64,000 nt of DNA from NCBI GenBank assembly GCA_976226885.1, contig OZ320314.1, positions 68,820,001-68,884,000 of the forward strand, written 5' to 3'. The translations under genes were made by a program, and so were the position numbers. Below are positions 435-57,078 of this stretch, in pieces. The stretch's first letter is position 1. The number at the start of each line of letters is the position of its first letter. Source of the stretch: Iphione sp. A-MEVVRFRX5. Its lineage: Eukaryota. The notes under the pieces were generated by a model. It had not been told where the DNA came from. It did not search any database and saw nothing but the letters and a program-made list of their open reading frames with translations.

Positions 435-803
435 GTAAGTATAATACAGTTGAGACCCACTTAGAAGACCAAGCTTGGGACTGGGCAATTTTGGACTCTG
501 TTTCAGCTTAGTTACATTAAGCATCAACTTTGTAGAGGAGTTCTCTTCTCTGGTACTGTAAAATCTAGGTCTGTCACCAGGTTTGGTCTCAGACTTAGTC
601 CCGGTCTTAGAAGGTTCAGATTTATCTGAGTGGATTTTAAGATGGTTTATTTTATTTTTGATTAAAGGTAACTAACATAGACAGTGAACCTGTCAAAGTA
701 AAAGTAGTCATTTAACATACATTTGTATACATCTCGCATCTATTACGACAAAGTCCTTTTCAGTGTCCTTGTTTCTTTTGAAAGCTTGTTGCATTTTTTC
801 CAG

Positions 804-1013
804 CTTCGGCCTCTAGGTTGTAACCTCCTACCCATTGAGACTGACAATATGGGAATGTTGCCAGACAGTCTTGCTTCAGTGTTGTCTCGCTGGAGACCAG
901 AGGATGCTCAGGACCCAGCCTCAGGCCTACCCAAGCTACTCTATACCGTGCCAAATGGAGTCAATCCAACAGGCGCCTCACTCACTGCTGAAAGAAAAGA
1001 GAAAATATACAAG
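804..1013 (+). CDS. AADAT: AADAT-like exon (LRPLGCN...LLYTVPNGVNPTGASLTAERKEKIYK)
   Basis: ttttttccag| acceptor and AAG|gtaatg donor; 210 nt. Contains the class I aminotransferase LYTVPNGxNPTG motif. Confidence 0.95.
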
Positions 1014-1790
1014 GTAATGCAAAAGTACAACTCGGCCTATATTGAAATCATCAACAAAAAACAACACCGAGGCTGCTCTGTACTGCGCCAATTTCTTTCC
1101 GTCAAATAAGCACCTCATTCACTACAGAAAGAAAAGTTAACATCTACAAGATATGGTAGGAGAGCATCTCTTTCGATTCTTTATTCTTAAAACAGTTCTG
1201 ACAAATTTTAGAACAGTAGGGTATACTTTTATTAAGGTAGCCTCTCGGGAAACAAGCTTCTTTTTAGTGAAACCGGTATTCTGTACAGAATTTATGGCCT
1301 AAGGCCTGTGTCTCTATACATATTTTTGAAAGAATTAAATGAAAAAGAACAGGACAAATAAAGACATGTTCTAGTACAAAATAAAATGATTTATCAGTAA
1401 AAATCATTTCAAAAGCTACTAAAATTATTGCTAGTGTGATCCGACTCTCTTAATGAAGTTTCTCACAACAAAGTGTTTTTGTGGAACATATGTTAAAGGC
1501 CAGATTCCATAGCTGCGTTGGTGTCCATGTGCATTCCCACCCATTTTGTATCCATTTCCATGCACTGTTATTGAACCAGTGATCAGTATTAGAGGATGTC
1601 AAATGCGTCTGTGCGTGTGACTGTCTGTGACCATTCATGGGATCATTAATTGTCCCGGACCGATAATTTAATGCAAACAGACAACAACGGACAGTAGGAT
1701 AGAGGATATGTCCTTTGTAGCAGGTGTAACTTGTTAGTTTATGTAAAATAATATATAATTTGCATATAACCTGCAAAAAAAACAATCATG

Positions 1791-1940
1791 CCATTTACAT
1801 AGATTTGGGCAGAATTCCTTACAATAAACACAAAAGCGTGCTTTTACACAGATTTGGCCAGAATTTCTTACGATCAACACAAAAAACACACCATTTGCAC
1901 AGATTTGTCCAGAATTCCTTTATGATCAGCACAAAACACA
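1791..1940. repeat. Degenerate minisatellite, ~50-bp unit x3
   Basis: The core agatttg(g/t)(g/c)cagaatt(c/t)ctt recurs at 1801, 1850 and 1901. Confidence 0.75.
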
Positions 1941-2856
1941 TATCATCTGTCATACATCTATCATAGATTTCGTGAAACATAAATGCACTGTCAATATAAA
2001 CCCCTAATTTATCATAGATTTCATGCATCCTCTCACAACCTTGGCACAACCTCAATAGGCACCCCCGTCCATGAAGCTGCATGACTGCAAAACGCATGTA
2101 AAATGCAGGTTGGTGCACACGGACAGCCAACGCAGGTGAACACAGCTCAATGCATGTAAGGAACCCGGGCCTAAGGGATTATTAGGGGAGGTATACATGT
2201 ACCTGTTTATCAACAGCAAGCGCCTTTGGCACCTTCAACTGGTTAATTAGGGTGTGGTTGTGGTGCAGGGGGGGTGTCAGAGAGAGGGGGGGAAAGGGTT
2301 AAAGTCCAGACTACCCAGCATTTATAACCCTCGGTTCTGCTTGACTGGACACTGACATGTGTAGTGATATTACACCCAGCTGAAAAAGTAGTGCCAGAAT
2401 TTTATTCTGGTTTCTTTTATATTCTACTTTCTACCTTAAAACATATGGTAATATATATTTTTCTAAAAAGGATGAACATAGAATGTGAGAGAAGAAAAAT
2501 AATGAAGTTTTGAAAGAGTCTCATACACATGAGATCTTCCCCCGTGGCTGGACTACTTTTGGGCAACGTTTTATATGTGTAGTGTAATTAACCAATTAGC
2601 AGAGTACGTAAACACTGTCGTAGCATCATTTTGACACCGTTATCTGTTGAAATGATTAGTCAGGTATCTAATCACTTCCAAGTAGACACGGTATTTGTTA
2701 AACTTTTGATGCATGGGGCTTATGGATGTTGCTGTAAGTGTCTCTTAAGACTAACAAGAATGAGACAATAAATAATTCTACATGATCCTACAGTTGCATA
2801 AAAGCTGCAAGTATAAATCTGTTAATCATCATTTTGCTTTCACATTTTATTTTCAG

Positions 2857-2922
2857 ATTGCACAAAAATATGATATACTTATCTTGGAGGATGACCCGTA
2901 CTATTTCCTACAATATACCAAT
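2857..2922 (+). CDS. AADAT: AADAT-like exon (IAQKYDILILEDDPYYFLQYTN)
   Basis: ttttcag| acceptor and |gtaagt donor; 66 nt. Contains the EDDPY motif (PLP-contacting Asp/Tyr). Confidence 0.95.
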
Positions 2923-3414
2923 GTAAGTCTGTCGTCTTCATATGCAAGCAATGTTAAGTGGTTATTTAGTTGATTGTGAACAGGAAAGTATCGCTCCTTT
3001 TTCCTTTCATCTTTTGACCGTAACTGCCCGCTCACCAGCATTCCCTACATGCTATACACATATATTAATATTTTCCTTACTGCAAAATACCCTCAGGATC
3101 GACAGTCATGGTTAAATTGGTAGCTTTGCTTATACCTGTCGGCTTGCTTGTAAATGTGACGTCACGCTCAAGCTTGTCAGCTGTCTTATGCTAGGCTATT
3201 GTGGTAAACATAACAATGCTGATATCTATTGCTGGAAGTGTACTCAGCTATCTTCTCCTGAGGAATAAAGAACTCATCAGACTGGAACACAAACTGCATC
3301 GCATATAACAACCCATGAACTTCCAGCAATACTTTACACAATGTAAAGCAATGTGAGGGGCCGTCCCCTCCGAAGCTGCTTGTGTAATCGATCTTTACCT
3401 CATTTCTCTGACAG

Positions 3415-3497
3415 ACACCAGCGCCGAGTTTCCTCTCCATGGATCAGGATGGCCGTGTCCTTCGATTTGATTCCTTCTCCAAAGTTTTCTCGTCTGG
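3415..3497 (+). CDS. AADAT: AADAT-like exon with the PLP Schiff-base lysine (TPAPSFLSMDQDGRVLRFDSFSKVFSSG)
   Basis: ctgacag| acceptor and GG|gtttgt donor; 83 nt, ends in phase 2. DSFSK motif with the Lys codon at 3481-3483. Confidence 0.95.
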
Positions 3498-5320
3498 GTT
3501 TGTTCCAACTTTAGACATTTTCTAGGAACAAGACTTAAAAGTACACTCTCCTGATGTACATGTTAAACATGCATGCATAAAATTTGCTCTCCCGCAGGCC
3601 ATCCCTGAAAGAGACGTTATATTGTCTCGAGTGACGTCCACTCTTACCCATTTTAGTAACAAATGGGAACACACTGAGACCCAACGTGGGATATATGGAA
3701 CTCAAGTTAGGCTCTTATATATATCAGATATCAAATATTTTTTGTCACCAATGTCATAGAGGAGGTGGTAGGACTCGATCAAGGAATACTGCTGTCCAAT
3801 TATCCGACCCTCCATCTTTTTTTGATATGGTGTTCTTGCCACTGGCTTATTTTTGTATAATTCAAAATGATTTAAATATCCATTTAACATATTTTAATAT
3901 ATTGTTGTACATACAAAACAGTTGAAGACACAGTCAGTTTGTAGAATTCAAGGCATGCGGCTATGTCATAGACTGCTCACCCAGGCCGAACTGATTAGTT
4001 CCACTTGTTTGAATGGTTGGTGGGTGATAATTTCCTCAGATGACCCCAAACACTATGGATGGATCGATAACAATATTGTAACCATATTGATTAATTGCCC
4101 CTTGAAATTCGGCACTGAAAATAAATGAAGAAAGGGGAGAGGGAAGAAATATGTGGCGAAGTAGGGAAGGAGGTGTTGGGTAAGTTGTGGAAAAACGGGA
4201 AAGAGATATCTTAAAGCGGGAAGGAGAAATTATATGTTGATCTGGAAAAGAGGTTCAAGAGATGAAAGGAAAGGTTGAGGAAATTGAGGGAATAGAGAGC
4301 AGGAGAGGTTAGTGAGATAGGAGGAGGAGAAAAGATACTGAGATGTGTGTACGTGTGTGTGCGTGCTTGTGTGTACAATACGTGAGGAATCGCCACTGTA
4401 TAGATAAATTTATTGATCCCTCCACAGTGATTATTGATTGTTAAAATATCAGCAGTACCCATCCCTGCCCTGAAAATTATTTGCGATAGGATTTAGTTCA
4501 TGCTTTGTACACCAGGTGGTCACCTGAGGGACTCCCTCGATCAACGCTGACACCCGCACCTGTGCCAGTTTTCCCAGGGCGCCCGCTCAATACATGTGTA
4601 TGTGTGCATGTATGTGTGTGTGTGTTCCGGGCGTGGCTGGCACTAGGAAAATGCGCAGTGGCGCTGGAAATGAGGTAGCGGCTGATGCTGGTTGACCACA
4701 GAAAAAAAAATTAATACCACATTTGGATGGCACGACTCCATACTGAAAAACAGAAAATATGCCCCAAAGATGATATTTGTGAACCAGCACTGTTTAGTTT
4801 AGTGAGGTAAAAGTAACAGCTCCATCAAAACAACGATTCACCATTAATGTTTGAGTCCACAGTGTATGTCCAGATGATGCTGACATCTAGGAGGTGCACG
4901 GGGAATCGTGGTGCATCTGAAATAAATATCGCACTTGGTACACTTAACCAGAAAAAGGCCTTCTAGGAGGCGTGCTTTACCATTCTGGGTGGTTGCCCCT
5001 CCCCCAACCCACCTACTAACCCCTCCAACCCCCAGCAGGTATGGTTTGAGTAGTCACCGTGCAACATCCTAAACATCAAATTAGCCTTTTGAATGAGCAA
5101 ATATGACCGTTTGCAAAACATTTTCCTATATCATATATCATTACATATTGATTACATAGATGAGCGAATCATCACTTTGGATACACTGAGTTCCTCAAGA
5201 ACAGTAAAATTTGTTTTATATTTAATTCATTTTTTGTATGTACATGTATACATATTTTAGTTCTTAAAAGAAACATCGTTACTGATAATACATTCTATAT
5301 GGAGTCTTTCCGTGTTGCAG

Positions 5321-5417
5321 ACTGCGGTTTGGCTTTGTGAGTGGTCCCCAGCCTCTCGTTCAGCGGGTGGTTCTCCATCAGATGGTCTCCTCTATGCATG
5401 CCAGCACGATGTCTCAG
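5321..5417 (+). CDS. AADAT: AADAT-like exon (G-LRFGFVSGPQPLVQRVVLHQMVSSMHASTMSQ)
   Basis: gttgcag| acceptor and CAG|gtgtga donor; 97 nt, phase 2/0, consistent with the previous exon. Contains the GLRxG motif. Confidence 0.93.
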
Positions 5418-5750
5418 GTGTGATTCTTTATATCCAATTAGCCCCGTTCTAAGTTAGCCCCATTTAGAGATCGCATGATCTCACAAGAACCATGTGACAC
5501 CAAGCTTCTAAACTCATTTAGATAAGGTGTGTACACTAGTCTTTGAACTTGCACCGAATTATTTCAGGTTATTTTATTCAGAATCACTCCTTGAAAAGAC
5601 TGCGAAACGCATGTAGTTTAAAATGTAACCCATCGTCTATGAGCAGCGTTTTTCTTATAGCTAAACATTTTTCATGGTACACGTCTGCCGTGAGACATGC
5701 AATCTAGAGATAAACAAAACACTTATCTACTCTTTACTTATCCATGCTAG

Positions 5751-5812
5751 GTCCTAATTGCTGAGGTGCTAAACCACTGGGGACTTGACGGATTTAAAAA
5801 ACATGTCCAACA
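5751..5812 (+). CDS. AADAT: AADAT-like exon (VLIAEVLNHWGLDGFKKHVQ)
   Basis: gctag| acceptor and CA|gtaagt donor; 62 nt, phase 0/2. Matches the LLHxWGxEGFxxHV segment. Confidence 0.92.
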
Positions 5813-6179
5813 GTAAGTTCCCGCCCTCTTATTATTAATAATGGATGTAATGTTCTAACGTTAATGACACTTATTGTGTCCTTTTTATCACACGCAGTGT
5901 GGAAGCAAGTGTTTTCCAGACAAGCCTTAACCTGAACACGCTGGTAACGTGTATACTGTTGTCCTCTGTACTTTTCCTGATTCCTTCAACTTGTATCCGT
6001 ATGTATTATCAGTAATATTATCCTTACAACCATTCTTCTTTGATCAAAATGAGAGAATGACACAGGAAGAGAACAGAGGGTGAGAGAAGCAAAAGTAGAG
6101 TGAGTGCGAGAAGGAAAAAGAGAGGAGCACATTGTTATACTAGACTGAATCCATGGAAAATGTATGAATGATACATATA

Positions 6180-6541
6180 CAGTGGAGTCCTTCACTGCAG
6201 ACGCCCGGACACAGTGGACAACCCATAGAATGGACTGTTTGGGTACAGTCCCAAACAAAAACAAGTAAATAATATGTTTACAACAGCTAAGACACAGTGG
6301 ACACTCAGTTACTCATCAACTTCAGCACTTTAGTACTTTAACTCATTAAATTCAGCACGTTTAGTACTGTAACTCGTTAAATTCAGCTAAATTCAGCACT
6401 TTTAGGACTTTAACTCATTAAATTCAGCACTTTTAGGACCTTAACTTATTAAAACTGCAGAGCTGGGCTACAGTGGACACCCGCGACAGCGCACGCTTTA
6501 AGGACAGTCCGGCAGATGCCCACTGTTGAGGAGTTCCACTG
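6180..6541. mobile_element. pogo/Tigger-type MITE (TA-flanked, CAGTGGA... termini), left member of a tandem pair
   Basis: TA|CAGTGGAGTCC... at 6180 and ...GAGGAGTTCCACTG|TA at 6541. Imperfect inverted ends share CAGTGGA and CCGGAC. Confidence 0.7.
6321..6453. repeat. Minisatellite, ~31-bp unit x4 plus a partial unit, inside the MITE
   Basis: Unit ttcagcacttttag(t/g)actttaactcattaaa starts at 6321, 6351, 6392 and 6423. Confidence 0.85.
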
Positions 6542-6543
6542 TA

Positions 6544-6732
6544 CAGTGGAACCTTTCTACTGCAGATGGCGGAGAGCCTGTGTCCGCAGTAGGGGATGTC
6601 CAGTAGGCGGTGTCCACAGTAAACATTAGACATTTAACTATAAATCAAGGGTTTTTGTATGGTTTGTAAAAATAATGTCTGCACATAGGGTTGTCTGCTG
6701 TGTCCGGCTGTACGCTAACTGAGGTTTCACTG
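6544..6732. mobile_element. pogo/Tigger-type MITE, right member of the tandem pair
   Basis: TA|CAGTGGAACCTTT... at 6544 and ...GAGGTTTCACTG|TA at 6732. Confidence 0.7.
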
Positions 6733-7140
6733 TATATCTAAATGAACTTCTTGTGAATGTCCAGTTTTAATAGGTATCACTCAGTAATTGCAGTGTATAA
6801 TACTTGACTGAAAATCACTCATAAAGTGATAGAATAATGATCGAGCTTCAAATCAATACTTTTACTCAAAGTGCAGGTGTAGAGCTAATACGAACATACC
6901 AGGATTGCATTGATCTACTCTTTTTTTTTGAAATTACAAAGTCTTTTTTGCATCTTTTAAGGGAAGCAGTGCCTCGTTTCATACTGAGGTACATAACATG
7001 AAAGCAGAACTGAATACTATAAAGAATGAATTATCTATCTAATCGTCATTATGGTGTACATGAGACTTAAATTTGGGATAAAAGACCGCTTAACCACGCA
7101 TTACTTACTGAAATGTGTTCTATATACGTTTCTGTTTTAG

Positions 7141-7205
7141 AATTGTAGACTTTTATAGGGGTCAAAAAGAAGCGATGATTTCATCTGCCACCAAGAGATT
7201 GACAG
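7141..7205 (+). CDS. AADAT: AADAT-like exon (IVDFYRGQKEAMISSATKRLT)
   Basis: tgttttag| acceptor and G|gtatgt donor; 65 nt, phase 2/1. Matches [21 protein letters not shown]. This exon is not visible in the supplied ORF track. Confidence 0.9.
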
Positions 7206-7286
7206 GTATGTACAGTGTACCTCCATAGTTAAGGTCAGGAATACATCTACTTGTTTATCTGTATATCTTTCTATCTGTCTACATAT

Positions 7287-7309
7287 ATGTATGTATGTAT
7301 GTATGTATG
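7287..7309. repeat. (ATGT)n microsatellite
   Basis: About 5.75 perfect units. Confidence 0.9.
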
Positions 7310-7351
7310 AAATAATCATCAATACAAAATTGACTAAACTGATGACCTTAA

Positions 7352-7705
<354 letters not shown>

Positions 7706-8030
7706 TAATATTTAGGAAAAGTGCCTTTTGTTATGTTTCATGGCATCCCAGACAATTGGCATTATGAGGTCCGGTTCTCATATGTGCATCGGCCTGCATA
7801 TGTACATGCAGGTGCATTGGTGTGCATTAGATTTTGCCCACACCTTCTTGCACAGCAGTGTCTTTTGAGCCTGCATTTGAGTATGTTGCAAAATGTTGCA
7901 TAGTATTGTGTGAGTGTGTTGTCAAAGGTAAGCAAGACTTTGAGCATATGTTAGATTATGTAAAGGTACTAAAAAAGTGGTATTTCAGAAGAGAAATCCT
8001 CCAAATACCAGTGAATCTGATGAGTAAACG

Positions 8031-8112
8031 TCCTAAAACTGGCAAATTTGATAGAAAACCATGCTAAAATTGCCAATTTGATGCATACAATCCTAAAACT
8101 GGTGAATTTAAG
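8031..8112. repeat. Degenerate minisatellite, 30-bp period x3
   Basis: cctaaaactggcaaatttgat-like units start at 8031, 8061 and 8091. Confidence 0.7.
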
Positions 8113-9094
8113 GAAAAAAAGTTTTACAAACAACAAATTTGATGAAGATGTGCAGCAATGTGCAGATGTCCAGTAATCATGATTTTCACTTCATCTAACG
8201 TATGTAAGATTCATGTTCTTGCCTGCTACAAGAGATATATGTCCAATGCTACTTGTGTATTGACATAAATTGCATGAAAATTATAAAGAAATGTCCAAAA
8301 AACAGGCAACACACATTAACGCATGCCAGCAAACACAGCAACACATATGGAACATCCTGCAGTGAATTCACTATGTCCAGTAAAATGCACAGCAGCACAT
8401 AGACATTGCACTGGACAACGATGCAGATATGGAAACCGAGCCTTATCAACAGGCGCTGTTGACTTACGCCATAACCGACTTATGCCATGACCAAGTTGCT
8501 ACATATTCTTTTCGACTATATTGCACCCAAACATCAAGTCAGTGCCTATAGGAAGGACCATTGGCATGTGAATTACTGATGTTGCTGGTTGTGGTGCGAA
8601 TTGCCTTGCCCCCTGTTTAATGTAGTCATTCATGAAATAGAGTAAGAAAACAAAAACGTTATAAAGCACACATCCATACTAATTTGCTTTTAATAGGGGG
8701 TTTCAATAATTGTAAAGAAGCAGCTCTATATAACGAGCTATATGTGCCTTATGTGTCCAAAATGTTTTAAAGAATTATTGAACATGACTTTGGAAAGATA
8801 GTGTTTTAAGTATCACTCATCTTGGGTCATTAAAACATGTACATATCCGAACTTTACTGTACTGTCAACTTGTCAAATACAAATTCTGCTTTAATAGTAG
8901 ACAAGAAAGGAAGCGACGGAGGCTTGAATAGAACTGTCCAATTCAGCATCGGATTTTCTCCAATAACATTAATTAATTAACAGGTAAATGTATATATGTA
9001 GGAATATTATAGTCACTCGGATGCACAAATACCTTTATGTAATACGAGAAGATTCCCCAACCCTATGACATCACGATTGGTGTCACCTTGACAG

Positions 9095-9196
9095 GTTCTA
9101 CTGGTGCCTGGTGCTGCCTTCATGCCGGACAACAGCGCCCCCTGTCCATATGTGAGGGCATCTTTCTCCCTGGCCACGCCCGAGAAGATAGACCAG
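9095..9196 (+). CDS. AADAT: AADAT-like penultimate exon (VLLVPGAAFMPDNSAPCPYVRASFSLATPEKIDQ)
   Basis: ttgacag| acceptor and CAG|gttagt probable donor; 102 nt. Contains PG-x-x-F and the substrate-carboxylate-binding Arg in YVRASFS. Confidence 0.93.
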
Positions 9197-9980
9197 GTTA
9201 GTGAACTGTTGATACTATGAATAGGCCATATTTATGTGATCAAGCCGACGAATATATTCAAGCACGTGTCTACATAGTCGTGCAAACAACAGCGGTTATT
9301 CGTTTTTAGGAAAATCTTTTCAAAACTTCAATTCTGACTATACGATATGGACTATAGCCTTTTGAAGTTGACGAGGTGATTGGTGAGTTAAAGGGATCGC
9401 ATTGTTTCTTTAAGATCTCTGCTATCTAATTAACTGAATAGTTTAGTTCAGGTACCGCACACTAAGTGTCTTTCTGACAGGTGTCGCTCTGATCAGTCAT
9501 CCAAGCAAACAGCATTTAGATGTCGGCACAGTCCCTGTAACGCAATGGTTGGCGTAATTCTCCTACTTAATTGGTTAGATAAACTGATTCAAAATGGTTA
9601 ACCAGCACTGAATACCACAGCAGGTGACAATGGTGTTGCTGGTGTATTTCTAGGCGACTGAATAGAACTTGTATCTATAGTAATGCATCAACGAAGAGGT
9701 GGTACACGCAATATGTTGTAAATGTTGTCTTGCGATTTCACTGACATGCTCCAAATTTATTGTCAACGTTTTTGCCCCATTTAAGTGAAGTTGAGCCGAT
9801 TTATAATTGCAAATATTTGCTGGTGAAATTGTCCGGCAGTATGGTCCCGGGTATGTTGTGAGTTAACGTGTCATTACGTCGCAGCGTAACCAGATCCAAA
9901 CATAAATCTTAATCCATACAATTGCATATTTTGTATCAAAACTAAAATTAACTAAAAGAAAGCCATGCCCTGAGGTATTA

Positions 9981-12840: not shown

Positions 12841-14718
12841 CTATAACGTAGTGTCCATTTGATCAGGGGGTTTAGAGCTGCTCTGAAGGGCTGTCTCTAT
12901 GGAAACCTCTACAGTGTGATGCGTTGGAGCTTCAGAAGGATGTGTTGTGTGAGAAAGGAGAGGGGTCTCTGGGGTTAATGGGGCTGGTTGCGGAGGCAAG
13001 AGGGCGAGCGGAATGTCTGCAGCCTCAGACTGGTACGATCCATTTGACGAGGCGGTAGCCGTACTCATGGTGGAAAATGTTGAGGCATTTGCCAGGTTGT
13101 CAATGTAGGATAGCAGGGGTGTCTCCGACTGGCCCCTGGTGACAGCGGCAATGGTGTCAGTGACAACAATGATATCATCCGAGGGTCCCAACTGCTGTTC
13201 GGACGTGTTCTCGTTGGATGACATGTCGGTGATATCTAAGGACACGGGTGCAGCATCACGGGGAGGGAGTGCCCCTACACGAAATACAGCGTGGTCGTCA
13301 TCGTCGTCGTCACCATCGTCCATGGAAGCTTGGTGACTGTCCAGGCTCTCCATCAGTGGTGACCGCTGCCTTGGATTGGCCTGGTAGCAGGAGCGGCGCG
13401 GCTTGGGTGTGCCTTCCTTGTTGTTAGGCATCAGGAGGCAGGTACGCTGTATTCCCTGGATGTCAGCTTCACCTCCTGATGTGCAGTCAGGCGGACAGTC
13501 GCTGCACACCTCAAGGCTGGGGCTGGCTGAATACAAGGGCAGCTTAACTTCCTCTTCATTGCTGCTGTCTAGTGGGTACTTTAATAGGTGGTGCTGTCCC
13601 GACTTAGCCTTTGCTCCGACCACATGACACTCGGCGAATAGGTCATCCACCTCCTCCTCATCCTCGTGCTCGTGTCTGTGATCGTTGTGGTTGGACGGCC
13701 TGTGAGAGGAAGACGGGTCATACCAGAAGCTGGTCTCTTCCTGCGAGCTGGACCGGCGATTGGCATGGCGCTCATCCTCATCAATGTAAAACTCCACCTG
13801 CTCGTTGAGGTTGTCCTTGTAGATCGGCTTCAGAAAGCCGTTAGGTATATATTCATTGCAAGATCTCTCATTAGCAGCAGAAGCGGCCACAGCAGTAGCT
13901 GCAGCGGCGGCTGCAGTGGCAGCAGTGGCGGCAGCGGCGGCTGCTGCAACCGTAGTTGATGGAATGGCAGCTGGCCCATGGCCGTTGGGCAATGGAGGAA
14001 CAGCATTCAGCAGCTGGCGGTTGATGTTTTCAGCACTAACACTGGGATAACGAGAAAGTGGCACTCGGACACGCCTTTTGTGAGCCAGTGCTGGGTCCGG
14101 GATGGCCGTCTCAAGTGGCTGCATATGCACCCACTGTGCTGTAGCTGCAAGGATGGTTGGGTCAGGACTGCACACCGGGTCAATGACATAGTTAGTGCCT
14201 CTGCGACCATGCGATTCCTTGCAGTTCTGGCCACCAATAGCGGCGGCTGCAGCCGCTGCCTTGTTGGCCTGGCGCTGTTTGTACTGTTGCAAGTAGAAGT
14301 CATCCTCGTCAGTCCACGACTGATGACATTTGGCCTTGTATATGATGTAGAAGACCAGCATCAGTAGGAGAGATCCGAGGATGGCAGCGGTGCGTGCACC
14401 AGTCATGGGGTCGTACTCGTTGTAGAAGTTGCCGTACTGGGGCGGGTCGTTGGCCGTCAGTCGTGGCTGCACGTGCACTGTCCGTGTGGTGGGAGACACC
14501 GCTCCTTGAAGGGGTGTACTGTCAACCAGCGACCCTTCCAGGGACACCTTATCAGGGGTGCCACCATAGGAGGAGCTGTTAATGAGTCGCAGATGATTAC
14601 CGAGCAAGTCGGTCCCATTATGAGCTTCTCCACCGGCATCTTCACCCGAGGGAGCTGATGTTTCCCCATATTGATGGACTTGTGAAGAGAGCTTGGGCTT
14701 CTCATATAGCACCTTCAT
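12841..14718 (-). CDS. Uncharacterised 625-aa single-pass membrane protein with a long low-complexity cytoplasmic tail (single coding exon)
   Basis: Uninterrupted 1878-nt GC-rich ORF. The ATG at 14718 is preceded by an in-frame TAG 11 codons upstream, so it is the likely start. One hydrophobic stretch (aa ~110-127, TAAILGSLLLMLVFYIIY) is followed by KAKC; the ORF ends DTTL-TAG. No family recognised. Confidence 0.88.
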   Translation of the reverse strand: MKVLYEKPKLSSQVHQYGETSAPSGEDAGGEAHNGTDLLGNHLRLINSSSYGGTPDKVSLEGSLVDSTPLQGAVSPTTRTVHVQPRLTANDPPQYGNFYNEYDPMTGARTAAILGSLLLMLVFYIIYKAKCHQSWTDEDDFYLQQYKQRQANKAAAAAAAIGGQNCKESHGRRGTNYVIDPVCSPDPTILAATAQWVHMQPLETAIPDPALAHKRRVRVPLSRYPSVSAENINRQLLNAVPPLPNGHGPAAIPSTTVAAAAAAATAATAAAAAATAVAASAANERSCNEYIPNGFLKPIYKDNLNEQVEFYIDEDERHANRRSSSQEETSFWYDPSSSHRPSNHNDHRHEHEDEEEVDDLFAECHVVGAKAKSGQHHLLKYPLDSSNEEEVKLPLYSASPSLEVCSDCPPDCTSGGEADIQGIQRTCLLMPNNKEGTPKPRRSCYQANPRQRSPLMESLDSHQASMDDGDDDDDDHAVFRVGALPPRDAAPVSLDITDMSSNENTSEQQLGPSDDIIVVTDTIAAVTRGQSETPLLSYIDNLANASTFSTMSTATASSNGSYQSEAADIPLALLPPQPAPLTPETPLLSHTTHPSEAPTHHTVEVSIETALQSSSKPPDQMDTTL

Positions 14719-14763
14719 CTCCTTGTTTTGGACCCTCTCAGAATTCGCCTACAGCAGCCGTAT

Positions 14764-14790
14764 CTAAAACACGCAAAAAGATCGTATTTC
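14764..14790 (-). promoter_or_regulatory. Splice acceptor of the coding exon of the membrane-protein gene (implies a spliced 5' UTR)
   Basis: The minus strand reads ...ctaatgaaatacgatctttttgcgtgttttag|atacgg: branch-like CTAAT, pyrimidine tract, then AG, 45 nt before the ATG. Confidence 0.7.
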
Positions 14791-54490: not shown

Positions 54491-57078
54491 CCGTCGGCCC
54501 GCCTTAACCGGAGGGGTACCGGAATGCAAAAAATTGTCCGGATGGGAGGGGGTCCGGAGTGGCAACCCAAGCACCATGTGTCTCCTGGTAGGGAAAACTG
54601 TCATAATAGTAAAGTATGGGAACCTAATGGATACTATCGATTATCGATCTGTATTGATTTTAAAAGACTCCCATGCACCTCCTGGTGTGGAAAACTGTCA
54701 TAATAGTAAAGTATGGACCAAATATTACCACTATAAGGATTTTTATGAAATTCTGAAAAATCATGAGAAAGTCAATTTCAGTTAGGGATAAGGGTATTTA
54801 TTATAGAAAACATATGAAATACTCATGCACAATGGATAGATAACAATAAAAATCACAATGGTGAGAAAAAAAAAGTTAAAAAAAATAATAATAATTCACA
54901 AGACAATTTCTTCTAAACCTTAAAAAAGTCTTTGATGAGGGTCTGTCTTTTACTCTTATGCGTTTTCTGGGCATCTTGAAGCAGCCCCCTGAGGAATTCA
55001 ACTCCAGCAATATTATTGCACTCTTCACACAATCTGACCAGTGTGTCCACTGATTTTGACACTTCCTTGAAAGTGAGTGGTGGTGGGGGGACATCCTCTG
55101 TCTCCTCCTCATTCTCATCAGTTTGTGAGTCAGTCACCTCAGGCTGACTGACAAGACTGAGAATGGCCTCATCAGTCAATTCCCCATTGGTCTCAGCCTC
55201 TTGGTCCACCTTTGAGTATTCCTGGGCAGACATCACTGTCTACCCATCCTCACTTGGCATTGCCTGCAGCAGAGCTTGTAACTCTGATAATAGGATGTCC
55301 TCCTCCTCATCAGATGGATCTTCATTGGTGGTGGTGGTGGTGTTGGTGGTGGTGGTGGTGGTGCTGGCGCTGGTGGTGCTGGTGGTAGTGGTGGAGCCGG
55401 GGAGGATGTTCACATGGTCCCAGCACTTTTTGATGGTTGTGGATGTGACTGAGGCCCAGCCTTCATGGAGCATCAGGATAGCTTTCCTGATGTCAGTCAC
55501 CATGGGCTCATCTCTTTCCACACACCCCAAAAAGTGCTCAGCCAGTCTCTTCCTGTATTGGGCTTTGAATGAGACAATGATATCAGCATCCAAAGGCTGG
55601 ATGTGTGCTGCAGTGTTGGGGGGCAGGAATTTTAGGGTCAGATGGGAAAACCTCTCGATTGTCTTATGAGGCCCAGCGTTGTCCACCAGAAGCAGGTACC
55701 GCCAGCCCTGACCCTTGGTGTGATCATTCAGCATCTGCAGGTATTCAACCCATACCTTCGATGTCATCCACGCCTTCTGGTTGTGATGATAGTGCACATA
55801 CATTCCAGGGTCGAATCCCCTCGAAAAACATCTGGGCTTGGCTGACTTCCCAATCACCAAGGGCCTCAACTTGTCTGATCCAGTGGTGTTACAAGCAAGG
55901 ACAACTGTAATTCAGTCTTTGTTTCATTTTTCACCCTTAACTGGGCCAGTTGACAAGGTAGCAGTAGGCTTCAGACGATAGAATAACCCTGTCTCGTCGA
56001 TATTGTAGACGTCTTCCGGATTGAAGCCCTAGAGTTGTTCCTGGAGGGAGGAGCGCCCTTCCTCGATGACTGCCATATCTGCTGAAGCAGACTCGCCCTG
56101 TTGCTTGTGGCATCGTATGTTGTTTCGAATCTTGAGGCGCCCAAGCCAGCCCTTGTTGTACTGGAAGCCCATGATGCCCATCTGCTCCCCCAACTTCTGG
56201 GCTTGACGAATCATCATGTCGTCTCATAGGATGGTGCCTCTTGACTGCATATCGGCAAACCATATCATCAGGGCGGCCTCAAGCTGGGACTGCAGTGGGC
56301 ATCGTTGGCGACACAGGCTCTCCTCTTCAGCCGACATGCCGATCCATTGTGAAGACTTTTTCAGAATATCGGATATGGTGGAACGTGGCACTGCAAATCC
56401 CCACTTGGAGCAGAATTTCGCAATCATGTCGGCCTGTGATGTTCCAGGGTGTTCTGCCTTATACAGGCAGATCTCCTTCTTTTGGGCGTTGGTGATGCAC
56501 ACTCGACAATGCTTGGAGGGTGGTGGTTCCATGATTGATGTTCCTGGAGGAATGAATGCAGAATCGTCCAGCCCTGCCCTTTTTAAGCTGATTCTCCCAC
56601 CCAGGAGGACGACCCAGCTGGCACGCCTCAATTGTGCACAGACAATACCCAGGGGGGACCTCAGGGCCACCGGCTATAAATTCTTTGTTCCCCTAATGCC
56701 TCCTCGCACCTATGTGTGATAAGGCCTCAGAAGTCCCCACCTAAGCCCCTTTGTTATGGAGTTACTCAGTGCGTCAACGGATGTCCCGTGTTGTCCGAGG
56801 AACTGATGCTATGTACTTCAAACAAACCCCTATCCATTGTCGTTGGGTCGCTCTTGTCACGCAGAGACGATAAGCCGCCTCGGACAACACGCCTCCGGTT
56901 AACTGAATGTATTTCCTATGTTAAATGCTGTAAAATACATCAAAATTTCGTCCGAATATGGAAAGGTGGGGTCCGGTTAAATAGTACAATTTTTAGAGAA
57001 AAACAATTGGTAATTCGTATACCCTCCAGTTATGACGATATTCTGGAAGGGATGGGTCCAGTAGGGGGGGGGCGACGG
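54491..57078 (-). mobile_element. Full-length pogo/Tigger-superfamily DNA transposon, 2588 bp, inactive
   Basis: TA|CCGTCGGCCC at 54491 and GGGCGACGG|TA at 57078. The subterminal TTAACCGGAGG (54504-54514) is the exact reverse complement of CCTCCGGTTAA (56892-56902). The element encloses a transposase pseudo-ORF. Confidence 0.85.
54913..56532 (-). pseudogene. pogo/Tigger transposase pseudogene (CENP-B-type HTH pair plus DDE_1 domain, DD30D)
   Basis: Four supplied ORFs share one reading frame. Joined, they give ~539 aa with ITNAQKKEIC...STISDILK (HTH), LEAALMIWF...KGWLGRLK (second HTH), YNIDETG (D 55996-55998), LVDNAGPH (D 55681-55683), QPLD (D 55588-55590) and a terminal QTLIKDFFK. Internal stops lie at 56224, 56029, 55924, 55912 and 55240. 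Confidence 0.95.

What the first reader, a model, noticed from the sequence alone, without database searches (positions are those of the whole stretch)
12841..14718. Orphan signal-peptide-less single-pass membrane protein resembling a receptor or channel accessory subunit
Seen in the sequence: no N-terminal hydrophobic leader, two N-glycosylation sequons before the helix (N34-G-T, N47-S-S), one TM helix (aa ~110-127), then K-A-K-C, and ~500 aa of Ala/Ser/Asp/Pro-rich tail. The positive-inside rule suggests an N-out/C-in (type III) topology, and the juxtamembrane Cys could be palmitoylated. This layout is shared with accessory subunits such as MRAP, KCNE and cortexin, but that is an analogy and I see no homology. 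A one-exon CDS with a spliced 5' UTR and a large non-coding upstream region is typical of neural signalling genes. This is the best candidate here for undescribed biology.
Basis: partly seen in the sequence, partly recalled or inferred. Interest (0 to 1): 0.7.

Follow-up and report, generated by a model that had tools for sequence, protein, structure and literature searches.

The report
Undescribed membrane adaptor family with PDZ tail
This is a real worm gene for a one-pass membrane protein with a sugar-coated outer tip, a very conserved membrane segment and a long floppy inner tail ending in a docking tag; it is not an orphan, because it belongs to a family of well over a hundred proteins in worms and snails that nobody has described.

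Summary
Window 12841..14718 (-) is a 625-aa ORF with one TM helix (aa 104-131). It has no N-terminal hydrophobic leader, sequons at N34 and N47, K-A-K-C after the helix, and a tail predicted to be disordered.

It is not an orphan. An exhaustive profile search found 157 relatives, none in Pfam or PDB. The only named ones are "hypothetical" proteins of the annelids Capitella and Paralvinella and the limpet Patella.

The family signature:
- a pre-TM block YDPxxGxRTAxxLG followed by the TM helix and YKxKC;
- a cytoplasmic ATAxW(I/V)QxQPL helix;
- a C-terminal [D/E]-T-x-[L/F] motif, a class I PDZ-ligand-like end (here DTTL).

N-out/C-in topology without a signal peptide is supported in four ways:
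- N-side sequons are twice the composition expectation;
- K+R counts are 1.3 on the N flank and 4.5 on the C flank;
- in-frame stops lie upstream of the ATG;
- a spliced mRNA contig from a relative shows only a 5'UTR intron.

TM conservation falls on one helix face, which suggests a membrane partner.

My best reading is a palmitoylatable type III adaptor that links a membrane partner to PDZ scaffolds. That function is inferred, not shown.

The parts
12841..14718 (-). Complete single-exon CDS, 625 aa plus stop (stop codon 12841-12843)
   Evidence: ORF list. Orthologues are 50/48/45 % identical over up to 91 % of the length. Overall pN is 0.29 against pS 0.73 versus L001.
14764..14780 (-). Putative 3' splice site of a 5'UTR intron: polypyrimidine tract 14766-14780, AG at 14764-14765
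   Evidence: Read directly from the sequence. An equivalent acceptor lies just upstream of the ATG in relatives L001, L003/L005 and L007. The relative's spliced mRNA contig L004 diverges exactly at that acceptor. It was not verified by RNA reads in this genome.
14719..14763 (-). Putative 5'UTR part of the coding exon, holding an in-frame TAG (14749-14751) upstream of the first ATG
   Evidence: Translation and sequence.
14410..14718 (-). N-terminal ~103-aa predicted extracellular/luminal segment: disordered, with sequons N34GT and N47SS and the conserved motif TRTVHVQPR (aa 78-86)
   Evidence: Across the family, N-side sequons number 86 observed against 40.3 +/- 5.5 expected from composition shuffles.
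14326..14427 (-). Family core, aa 98-131: F..EYDPMTGARTAAILGS pre-TM block, TM helix, then Y-K-A-K-C131
   Evidence: Y102, G107 and L114 are invariant. D103, P104, A111, L118, Y124, Y127, K128 and C131 are >=90 % conserved in 32 members. AF2 helix 104-131 has pLDDT >90.
14224..14316 (-). Cytoplasmic juxtamembrane helix, aa 135-165 (W-T-D-E-D-D-F-Y-L-Q-Q-Y-K-Q-R-Q...)
   Evidence: AF2 helix 137-165. The family pattern is RW(T/S)xxDxx(F/Y)(I/L)xxY(K/S).
14110..14160 (-). Conserved cytoplasmic motif LAATAQWVHMQPLETA, aa 187-203 (short helix)
   Evidence: T193, A194, W196, Q200 and P201 are >=90 % conserved. AF2 helix 187-198 has pLDDT ~90.
13870..13965 (-). Species-specific Ala/Thr-rich insertion (aa ~252-283) encoded by an imperfect GCN repeat
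   Evidence: It is absent from the orthologues in alignment A1. The tandem repeat finder reports 13876-13932.
12844..13128 (-). Conserved C-terminal block, aa 531-625 (LSYIDNL, STFSTMSTATASSNGSYQSE, HTVEVSIETAL)
   Evidence: 74 % identity to the L001 orthologue and pN 0.17.
12844..12855 (-). C-terminal D-T-T-L-COOH, a class I PDZ-ligand-like motif
   Evidence: T623 and L625 are invariant in the 5-sequence alignment. Among 87 family hits of >=300 aa, 41 end in [ST]x[LVI] (background 3.1 %) and 26 in [DE][ST]x[LV] (background 0.4 %). About 16 more end in E-T-x-F.
708..9217 (+). Convergent neighbour (context only): exons of a kynurenine/alpha-aminoadipate aminotransferase (AADAT) orthologue. The microsynteny is kept in two relatives.
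   Evidence: tblastn of window ORFs against L001/L002. phmmer of one exon against PDB gives AADAT at E 1.6e-27.

Best explanation
The ORF is an intact gene under purifying selection. It belongs to a conserved but undescribed family of single-pass membrane proteins, present at least in annelids and molluscs.

Shown or strongly supported:
- There is no signal peptide.
- About 100 residues of disordered, sequon-enriched N-terminus lie on the exoplasmic side.
- There is one TM helix whose conservation is concentrated on one face.
- A near-invariant Cys sits at the cytoplasmic membrane boundary.
- Two short conserved cytoplasmic helices follow the TM helix.
- The cytoplasmic tail is ~450 aa and disordered.
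- The C-terminus is a conserved [D/E]-T-x-[L/F] motif.

Inferred mechanism:
- The TM segment inserts as a reverse signal-anchor (type III).
- The N-terminus is N-glycosylated.
- Cys131 is palmitoylated.
- The conserved TM face and the juxtamembrane helix pack against a membrane partner or another copy of the protein.
- The free C-terminus docks into a class I PDZ domain of a Dlg/Scribble/NHERF-type scaffold.

The protein would then act as a membrane adaptor that tethers or positions its partner at a PDZ-organised membrane domain such as a synapse or cell junction. My rough confidence by step: real gene and new family member ~0.95; type III topology ~0.8; PDZ-linked adaptor function ~0.45.
For: Gene and family:
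- Four relatives were found at E 3e-125 to 3e-14.
- The exhaustive profile search gave 157 hits at E<=1e-3 and 35 at E<=1e-10, all matching the TM-centred core.
- The named relatives are only hypothetical proteins of Capitella, Paralvinella and Patella.
- The core is 83 % identical to the L001 orthologue, with pN 0.11 while pS is saturated.
- Synteny with AADAT is conserved.

Topology:
- There is a single hydrophobic peak and no leader.
- Mean K+R is 1.3 in the N flank and 4.5 in the C flank.
- N-side sequons are 86 against 40 expected, and 0 of 2000 shuffles reach that. C-side sequons are 122 against 121 expected.
- An in-frame stop lies between the acceptor and the ATG.
- The spliced mRNA contig L004 of a 48 %-identical relative joins non-coding 5' sequence 25 nt before the ATG, with an in-frame TGA 9 nt upstream of it.
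- The gene models deposited for Patella, Capitella and Paralvinella also lack a leader.

TM partner face: conservation in aa 104-131 is periodic at about 105 degrees, permutation p = 0.001.

PDZ end: C-terminal motif statistics, and T623 and L625 invariant among orthologues.

Structure: only helices 104-131, 137-165 and 187-198 are confident and the rest is disordered.

Analogy: PAG/Cbp is a palmitoylated transmembrane adaptor whose C-terminal VTRL binds the EBP50 PDZ domain (PMC4861716). Family member P0009 ends in VTRL.
Against: - There is no expression, localisation, glycosylation, palmitoylation or binding data for any family member.
- Only about 57 of 87 long family hits show the C-terminal motif. 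The others may be mis-called 3' ends or real losses.
- A C-terminal hydrophobic residue can also serve as an ER-export signal.
- The periodicity of TM conservation comes from related sequences, and it could reflect lipid-facing or insertion constraints.
- About 100 residues is long for an N-terminus that is translocated without a signal peptide.
- Tail tyrosines are replaced by F or I in orthologue P0003, so phosphotyrosine scaffolding of the LAT/PAG kind is unlikely.
Confidence: 0.55

Rival explanations
1. It is a dedicated auxiliary subunit of an ion channel, transporter or receptor, as KCNE, MRAP and FXYD proteins are. The conserved TM and juxtamembrane core would bind inside the partner's transmembrane domain and change its gating or trafficking. 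The tail would be secondary.
For: The TM/juxtamembrane core is by far the most conserved part, with invariant Y102, G107 and L114 and conservation on one helix face. The topology is type III and glycosylated, like KCNE. An aromatic-x-x-x-YD...R pre-TM block loosely recalls the FXYD signature; that resemblance is from my own knowledge.
Against: No member hits the Pfam models of any accessory-subunit family, and PDB sequence or profile searches find nothing. Known accessory subunits of this layout are 80-220 aa, whereas these proteins are 315-1020 aa with conserved distal motifs and a conserved C-terminus. No partner is known.
Confidence: 0.2
2. The C-terminal E/D-T-x-L/F is mainly a trafficking signal (ER export or sorting). 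The protein would then be a cargo or cargo receptor of the secretory or endosomal pathway, not a PDZ-tethered plasma-membrane adaptor.
For: The terminal residue is always hydrophobic (L, F or V), and C-terminal hydrophobic residues are known ER-export signals (established knowledge). The disordered tail holds many short linear motifs.
Against: Thr at position -2 and an acidic residue at -3 are conserved as strongly as the last residue: 26 of 87 hits fit [DE][ST]x[LV] against a 0.4 % background. That is the class I PDZ pattern and is not needed for ER export.
Confidence: 0.1
3. The ORF is only the last exon of a type I protein, and its signal peptide lies in an undetected upstream exon.
For: In L001 the frame stays open between the acceptor and the first conserved ATG. 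About 100 aa is long for an N-terminus translocated without a leader. No RNA reads were available for this genome.
Against: In the window an in-frame TAG lies between the acceptor-like site and the ATG. In the relative's spliced mRNA contig an in-frame TGA precedes the ATG, and all three frames upstream are closed. Another clade shows the same layout. None of the deposited gene models has a leader.
Confidence: 0.07
4. It is a membrane-tethered signal precursor. The glycosylated N-terminal segment would be shed at the conserved juxtamembrane motif ([KR]-T-[FVY]-[HY]-M-Q-P-[RK]) and act on other cells, as neuregulin does without a leader.
For: A conserved extracellular motif lies ~20 residues before the TM helix in most members. 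Neuregulin-1 shows that type III precursors with long N-termini exist (own knowledge).
Against: Apart from that motif and the sequons, the N-terminus evolves almost freely (pN 0.53, 31 % identity). It is predicted to be disordered and has few Cys (0.8 per 100 aa), which is not what a folded ligand looks like.
Confidence: 0.05

Closest known systems
Uncharacterised spiralian proteins: Capitella teleta CAPTEDRAFT_191415 (ELT93456.1), Paralvinella palmiformis LSH36_84g07024 (KAK2163188.1), Patella vulgata LOC126831121 (XP_050417717.2)
   Same: They are true homologues. They share the YDPxxGxRTAxxLG-TM-YKxKC core, the RW(T/S)xxD juxtamembrane helix and the ATAxWIQxQPL motif, and they have sequon-rich N-termini without a leader. 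Many end in (S/T)-x-L.
   Different: They are only 17-25 % identical overall to the window protein and are probably paralogous subfamilies. None has a described function or a paper.
PAG/Cbp and other transmembrane adaptor proteins (LAT, NTAL, LIME)
   Same: Type III single-pass topology, a Cys next to the membrane (the palmitoylation position), and a long disordered cytoplasmic tail. In PAG, a C-terminal VTRL binds the PDZ domain of EBP50 (PMC4861716).
   Different: No sequence homology. TRAP ectodomains are very short, whereas here ~100 glycosylatable residues lie outside. TRAPs carry a CxxC motif and conserved tyrosine motifs, whereas here there is a single Cys and the tail tyrosines are not conserved (Y to F/I in P0003). 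TRAP TM helices are not strongly conserved, whereas here the TM helix is the most conserved part.
KCNE, MRAP, FXYD and cortexin accessory subunits
   Same: Small-ectodomain single-pass proteins. KCNE also lacks a leader and is N-glycosylated at its N-terminus. In these families the TM and flanking residues carry the function.
   Different: No Pfam or PDB match at any threshold tried. Those proteins are 80-220 aa and lack a ~450-aa tail or a PDZ-type end.
CD34/podocalyxin family and other D-T-x-L-ended NHERF ligands (own knowledge)
   Same: The C-terminal D-T-x-L motif (DTTL, DTNL and DTKL in the window protein and its closest orthologues) is the pattern that binds NHERF-type PDZ domains.
   Different: Those are type I sialomucins with signal peptides and short tails. 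Nothing beyond the last four residues is similar.

Membership tests
Undescribed 'YDP-TM-KC / ATAxW / ETxL' family (Capitella CAPTEDRAFT_191415-like) | Pre-TM block (F/Y)YxxYDPxxGxRTAxxLG continuous with a single TM helix that ends in Y-K-x-K-C | tested here: met
   Window aa 98-131. Invariant or >=90 % columns are Y102, D103, P104, G107, A111, L114, L118, Y124, Y127, K128 and C131 in 32 members. The motif is present in 81 of 87 long hits.
Undescribed 'YDP-TM-KC / ATAxW / ETxL' family (Capitella CAPTEDRAFT_191415-like) | Cytoplasmic ATAxW(I/V)xxQPL motif 50-110 residues after the TM helix | tested here: met
   Window aa 192-202, ATAQWVHMQPL. T193, A194, W196, Q200 and P201 are >=90 % conserved.
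Undescribed 'YDP-TM-KC / ATAxW / ETxL' family (Capitella CAPTEDRAFT_191415-like) | No signal peptide, with a sequon-enriched N-terminal segment | tested here: met
   (30 of 32 members have at least one N-side sequon; 86 observed against 40 expected).
Undescribed 'YDP-TM-KC / ATAxW / ETxL' family (Capitella CAPTEDRAFT_191415-like) | C-terminal [D/E]-[S/T]-x-[L/V/F]-COOH | tested here: met
   The window protein ends in D-T-T-L.
KCNE (Pfam ISK_Channel) | Match to the family profile over the TM and flanks | tested here: not met
   No Pfam hit at E<=1 for the window protein or for any of 32 relatives. No PDB sequence or profile hit.
FXYD (Pfam ATP1G1_PLM_MAT8) | FXYD signature with two conserved TM glycines and a serine, and a profile match | tested here: not met
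   No Pfam hit in 32 members at E<=1. The spacing of the YD...R block differs, judging by comparison with the FXYD motif from my own knowledge.
MRAP / cortexin | Match to the family profile | tested here: not met
   No Pfam hit.
Transmembrane adaptor proteins (LAT/PAG type) | Very short ectodomain, juxtamembrane CxxC, and several conserved tyrosine docking motifs | tested here: not met
   The ectodomain is ~103 aa. There is a single conserved Cys131. The tail tyrosines at NY(V/I)IDP, NEY(I/V)PNG and LSYIDNL become F or I in orthologue P0003.
Class I PDZ ligands (functional class, not a homology family) | Free C-terminus X-[S/T]-X-hydrophobic that actually binds a PDZ domain | not testable with these tools
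   The sequence pattern is met and conserved. Binding needs an experiment or multimer modelling.

The most novel reading that the evidence does not exclude
This family is a previously unrecognised, ancient protostome class of type III membrane adaptors. Its invariant TM face would capture a specific membrane partner (a channel, receptor or adhesion molecule). Its E/D-T-x-L/F end would plug that partner into Dlg/Scribble/NHERF-type PDZ scaffolds. It would be an invertebrate counterpart, unrelated in sequence, of vertebrate auxiliary or adaptor proteins that organise synapses or junctions.
Probability: 0.3. Interest if true: 0.65.

Novelty: new variant of a known kind. Interest (0 to 1): 0.5.

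Why it matters
Single-pass proteins with disordered tails are hard to annotate and are usually left as "hypothetical". Here a clear signature defines a family of more than 150 sequences with no Pfam model, no solved structure and no paper. The signature is a pre-TM/TM core, a cytoplasmic W-motif and a PDZ-type C-terminus. The one-sided TM conservation, together with a scaffold-docking end, gives a concrete and testable hypothesis: a membrane partner on one side and a PDZ scaffold on the other. It can be tested in tractable spiralian models such as Platynereis, Capitella and Crepidula. If confirmed, it would add a component to invertebrate synapse or junction organisation. It would also give a well-supported example of a long (~100 aa) glycosylated N-terminus translocated without a signal peptide.

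Tried and rejected
- Pfam on the window protein (E<=1), on 32 relatives and on 10 more distant hits: no family, only scattered single-member noise.
- PDB sequence search with the full-length and core profiles: nothing below E 0.39.
- Foldseek of the core model against PDB: nothing (best E 2.6). The core is three helices with pTM 0.33, so a fold search cannot say much.
- Word-indexed homologue searches with the 32-member alignment and with the core region alone: only the same four or five proteins. The exhaustive search was needed to see the family.
- Literature search for the three named locus tags and for "ETLF"+PDZ: no papers.
- FXYD-like reading of the pre-TM F...YD...R block: rejected for lack of any profile match.
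- LAT/PAG-like phosphotyrosine scaffold: rejected because the tail tyrosines are not conserved.
- Hidden signal-peptide exon: disfavoured.
- Rfam, tRNA and tandem-repeat scans of the window added nothing relevant.
- Earlier scan notes by place and by sequence: nothing.
- The AADAT neighbour was searched exon by exon, by reference only.
- No contig was taken for human, and no N stretches were touched.
Full report
**Observation.** The minus strand of window 12841..14718 carries a 625-codon ATG-to-stop ORF.
- A 19-residue Kyte-Doolittle scan gives one strong peak at aa 108-129 (2.06). The only other window above 1.4 is a poly-Ala tract.
- The first 40 residues contain no hydrophobic stretch.
- Sequons lie at N34 (NGT) and N47 (NSS), before the helix. 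K-A-K-C follows it.
- The 494-aa tail is rich in A, S, P and D.
- The ORF is GC-rich (56 %) in flanks of 37-44 %.

**Gene model.**
- Upstream of the ATG (14716-14718) there is a polypyrimidine tract and an AG (14764-14780). An in-frame TAG follows at 14749-14751. If the exon starts there, the ATG is the first one in it and no upstream exon can add coding sequence in frame.
- Indirect evidence is good. For the 48 %-identical relative P0002/P0006, two contigs (L003, L005) carry an intron-like sequence ending in a ttttcag acceptor 25 nt before the ATG. A third contig (L004) diverges exactly at that acceptor into different sequence, so it is a spliced mRNA.
- In L004 an in-frame TGA lies 9 nt before the ATG, and all frames are closed in the preceding 200 nt.
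- The same acceptor-then-ATG layout is seen in L001 and in a distant clade, L007.
- A single coding exon behind a 5'UTR intron, with no signal-peptide exon, is therefore the best-supported structure.

**Selection and synteny.**
- Against three orthologous loci the synonymous sites are saturated (pS 0.73-0.82).
- Against L001, pN is 0.11 in the core (aa 92-210), 0.17 in the last 95 residues, 0.31 in the middle tail and 0.53 in the N-terminal 91 residues.
- The gene lies tail-to-tail with exons of a kynurenine/alpha-aminoadipate aminotransferase orthologue on the plus strand (708-9217). That arrangement is kept in L001 and L002.
- This is a real, orthologously conserved gene.

**Not an orphan.**
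- Word-indexed searches found only four relatives.
- The exhaustive profile search with alignment A1 found 157 proteins at E<=1e-3 and 35 at E<=1e-10. All match through the TM-centred core.
- The only named members are hypothetical or uncharacterised proteins of Capitella teleta, Paralvinella palmiformis, Patella vulgata and P. caerulea. No paper mentions them.
- Earlier notes of this scan call the genome a probable annelid, which fits.
- No member hits any Pfam family. PDB sequence and profile searches are empty.

**Family signature** (alignments A3 and A4):
- An extracellular motif near [KR]-T-[FVY]-[HY]-M-Q-P-[RK].
- (F/Y)YxxYDPxxGxRTAxxLG running into the TM helix, which ends in Y-K-x-K-C.
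- A juxtamembrane RW(T/S)xxDxx(F/Y)(I/L)xxY(K/S) helix.
- ATAxW(I/V)QxQPL.
- A C-terminus of [D/E]-T-x-[L/F].

Of 87 hits of 300 aa or more, 81 have the core motif. 41 end in [ST]x[LVI] (3.1 % background) and 26 in [DE][ST]x[LV] (0.4 % background). About 16 more end in E-T-x-F, notably a clade ending in SQETLF. The window protein ends in DTTL. Its orthologues end in DTNL, DTKL, VTSL and TTRL.

**Topology.**
- All 32 aligned members have one TM helix. The exception is one ORF whose N-terminal extension looks intronic.
- Mean K+R is 1.3 in the 15 residues before the helix and 4.5 after it.
- N-side sequons number 86 against 40.3 +/- 5.5 expected from shuffling each N-terminal segment, and no shuffle out of 2000 reaches that. 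C-side sequons are exactly at expectation, 122 against 121.
- This is selection for glycosylation sites on the N side only, so the N-terminus faces the lumen or exterior and the tail faces the cytosol.
- One caveat is that the sequences are related. The sequons are not positionally conserved, however, so the signal is not one inherited site.

**Structure.**
- AlphaFold2 was run with the family alignment. It gives confident helices at 104-131 (TM, pLDDT >90), 137-165 and 187-198.
- Everything else is low-confidence: 399 of 625 residues are below pLDDT 50.
- Foldseek finds nothing.
- Conservation within helix 104-131 is periodic at about 105 degrees per residue (permutation p 0.001). It marks the face G107-A111-L114-L118-Y124-Y127/K128-C131.
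- That is what a helix-helix interface in the membrane looks like, but it does not prove one.

**Mechanism.** I take the protein to be a type III, N-glycosylated membrane adaptor.
- Shown or strongly supported: the architecture, the conservation pattern, the topology indicators and the motif statistics.
- Inferred: palmitoylation at Cys131 (conserved in 29 of 32 members), packing of the conserved TM face and juxtamembrane helix against a membrane partner or itself, and docking of the free C-terminus into a class I PDZ domain.
- The E/D-T-x-L pattern is the classic preference of Dlg/PSD-95/Scribble and NHERF-type PDZ domains (established knowledge).
- PAG/Cbp gives a precedent for a palmitoylated type III adaptor whose VTRL end binds the EBP50 PDZ domain (PMC4861716).
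- A phosphotyrosine scaffold of the LAT/PAG kind is unlikely, because the tail tyrosines are replaced by F or I in orthologue P0003.
- The rivals are a KCNE/MRAP/FXYD-like auxiliary subunit, a trafficking signal in place of a PDZ ligand, a hidden signal-peptide exon, and a shed ligand precursor. They are weighed in their own sections.

**Comparison and novelty.** By homology it belongs to an unnamed family that is present in public databases only as hypothetical proteins. The general design (type III, palmitoylatable Cys, disordered tail, PDZ end) is known from unrelated proteins. I therefore rate it a new variant of a known kind and not categorically new. Interest is moderate: the family, its signature and its PDZ-type end appear to be undescribed, and the hypothesis can be tested directly.

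**Limits.**
- Organisms are known for only four relatives, so the taxonomic range beyond Annelida and Mollusca is open.
- No multimer modelling was available.

Noticed in passing
window 708-9217 (+): Seven or more exons of a kynurenine/alpha-aminoadipate aminotransferase (AADAT/KAT2) orthologue. It converges tail-to-tail on the studied gene, and this microsynteny is conserved in loci L001 and L002.
   Followed up: partly
window 55240-55869 (-): A 209-aa ORF matches the Pfam DDE_1 endonuclease domain (E 3e-28). It is probably a fragment of a pogo/Tigger-type DNA transposon. Overlapping ORFs on the opposite strand (55163-55669, 56216-56719) have no hits.
   Followed up: no
window 13870-13965 (-): A lineage-specific Ala/Thr-rich insertion (about 30 residues, imperfect GCN repeat) in the cytoplasmic tail. 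It is absent from all orthologues and looks like a recent repeat expansion inside a coding exon.
   Followed up: partly
L004:600-670 (+): The spliced 5'UTR of the relative's mRNA contig carries a short upstream ORF (about 17 codons) in the same frame as the main ORF. It ends 9 nt before the main ATG and may be a translational control element.
   Followed up: no
L002:10001-10290 (+): Upstream of the conserved start of orthologue P0003, the called ORF runs through a tandem repeat that translates as NQHEQRL-like units. This is probably non-coding repeat sequence, not a real N-terminal extension.
   Followed up: no
family hits P0066, P0081, P0082, P0090, P0092, P0093, P0099: A distinct clade has YDVMTGVRIAATLGG in the core and an invariant C-terminal SQETLF. 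It also shares tail motifs of its own (SSSDTSYLERRGSA, GSDSVF, FSTDSE). The organisms are unknown, possibly arthropods.
   Followed up: partly
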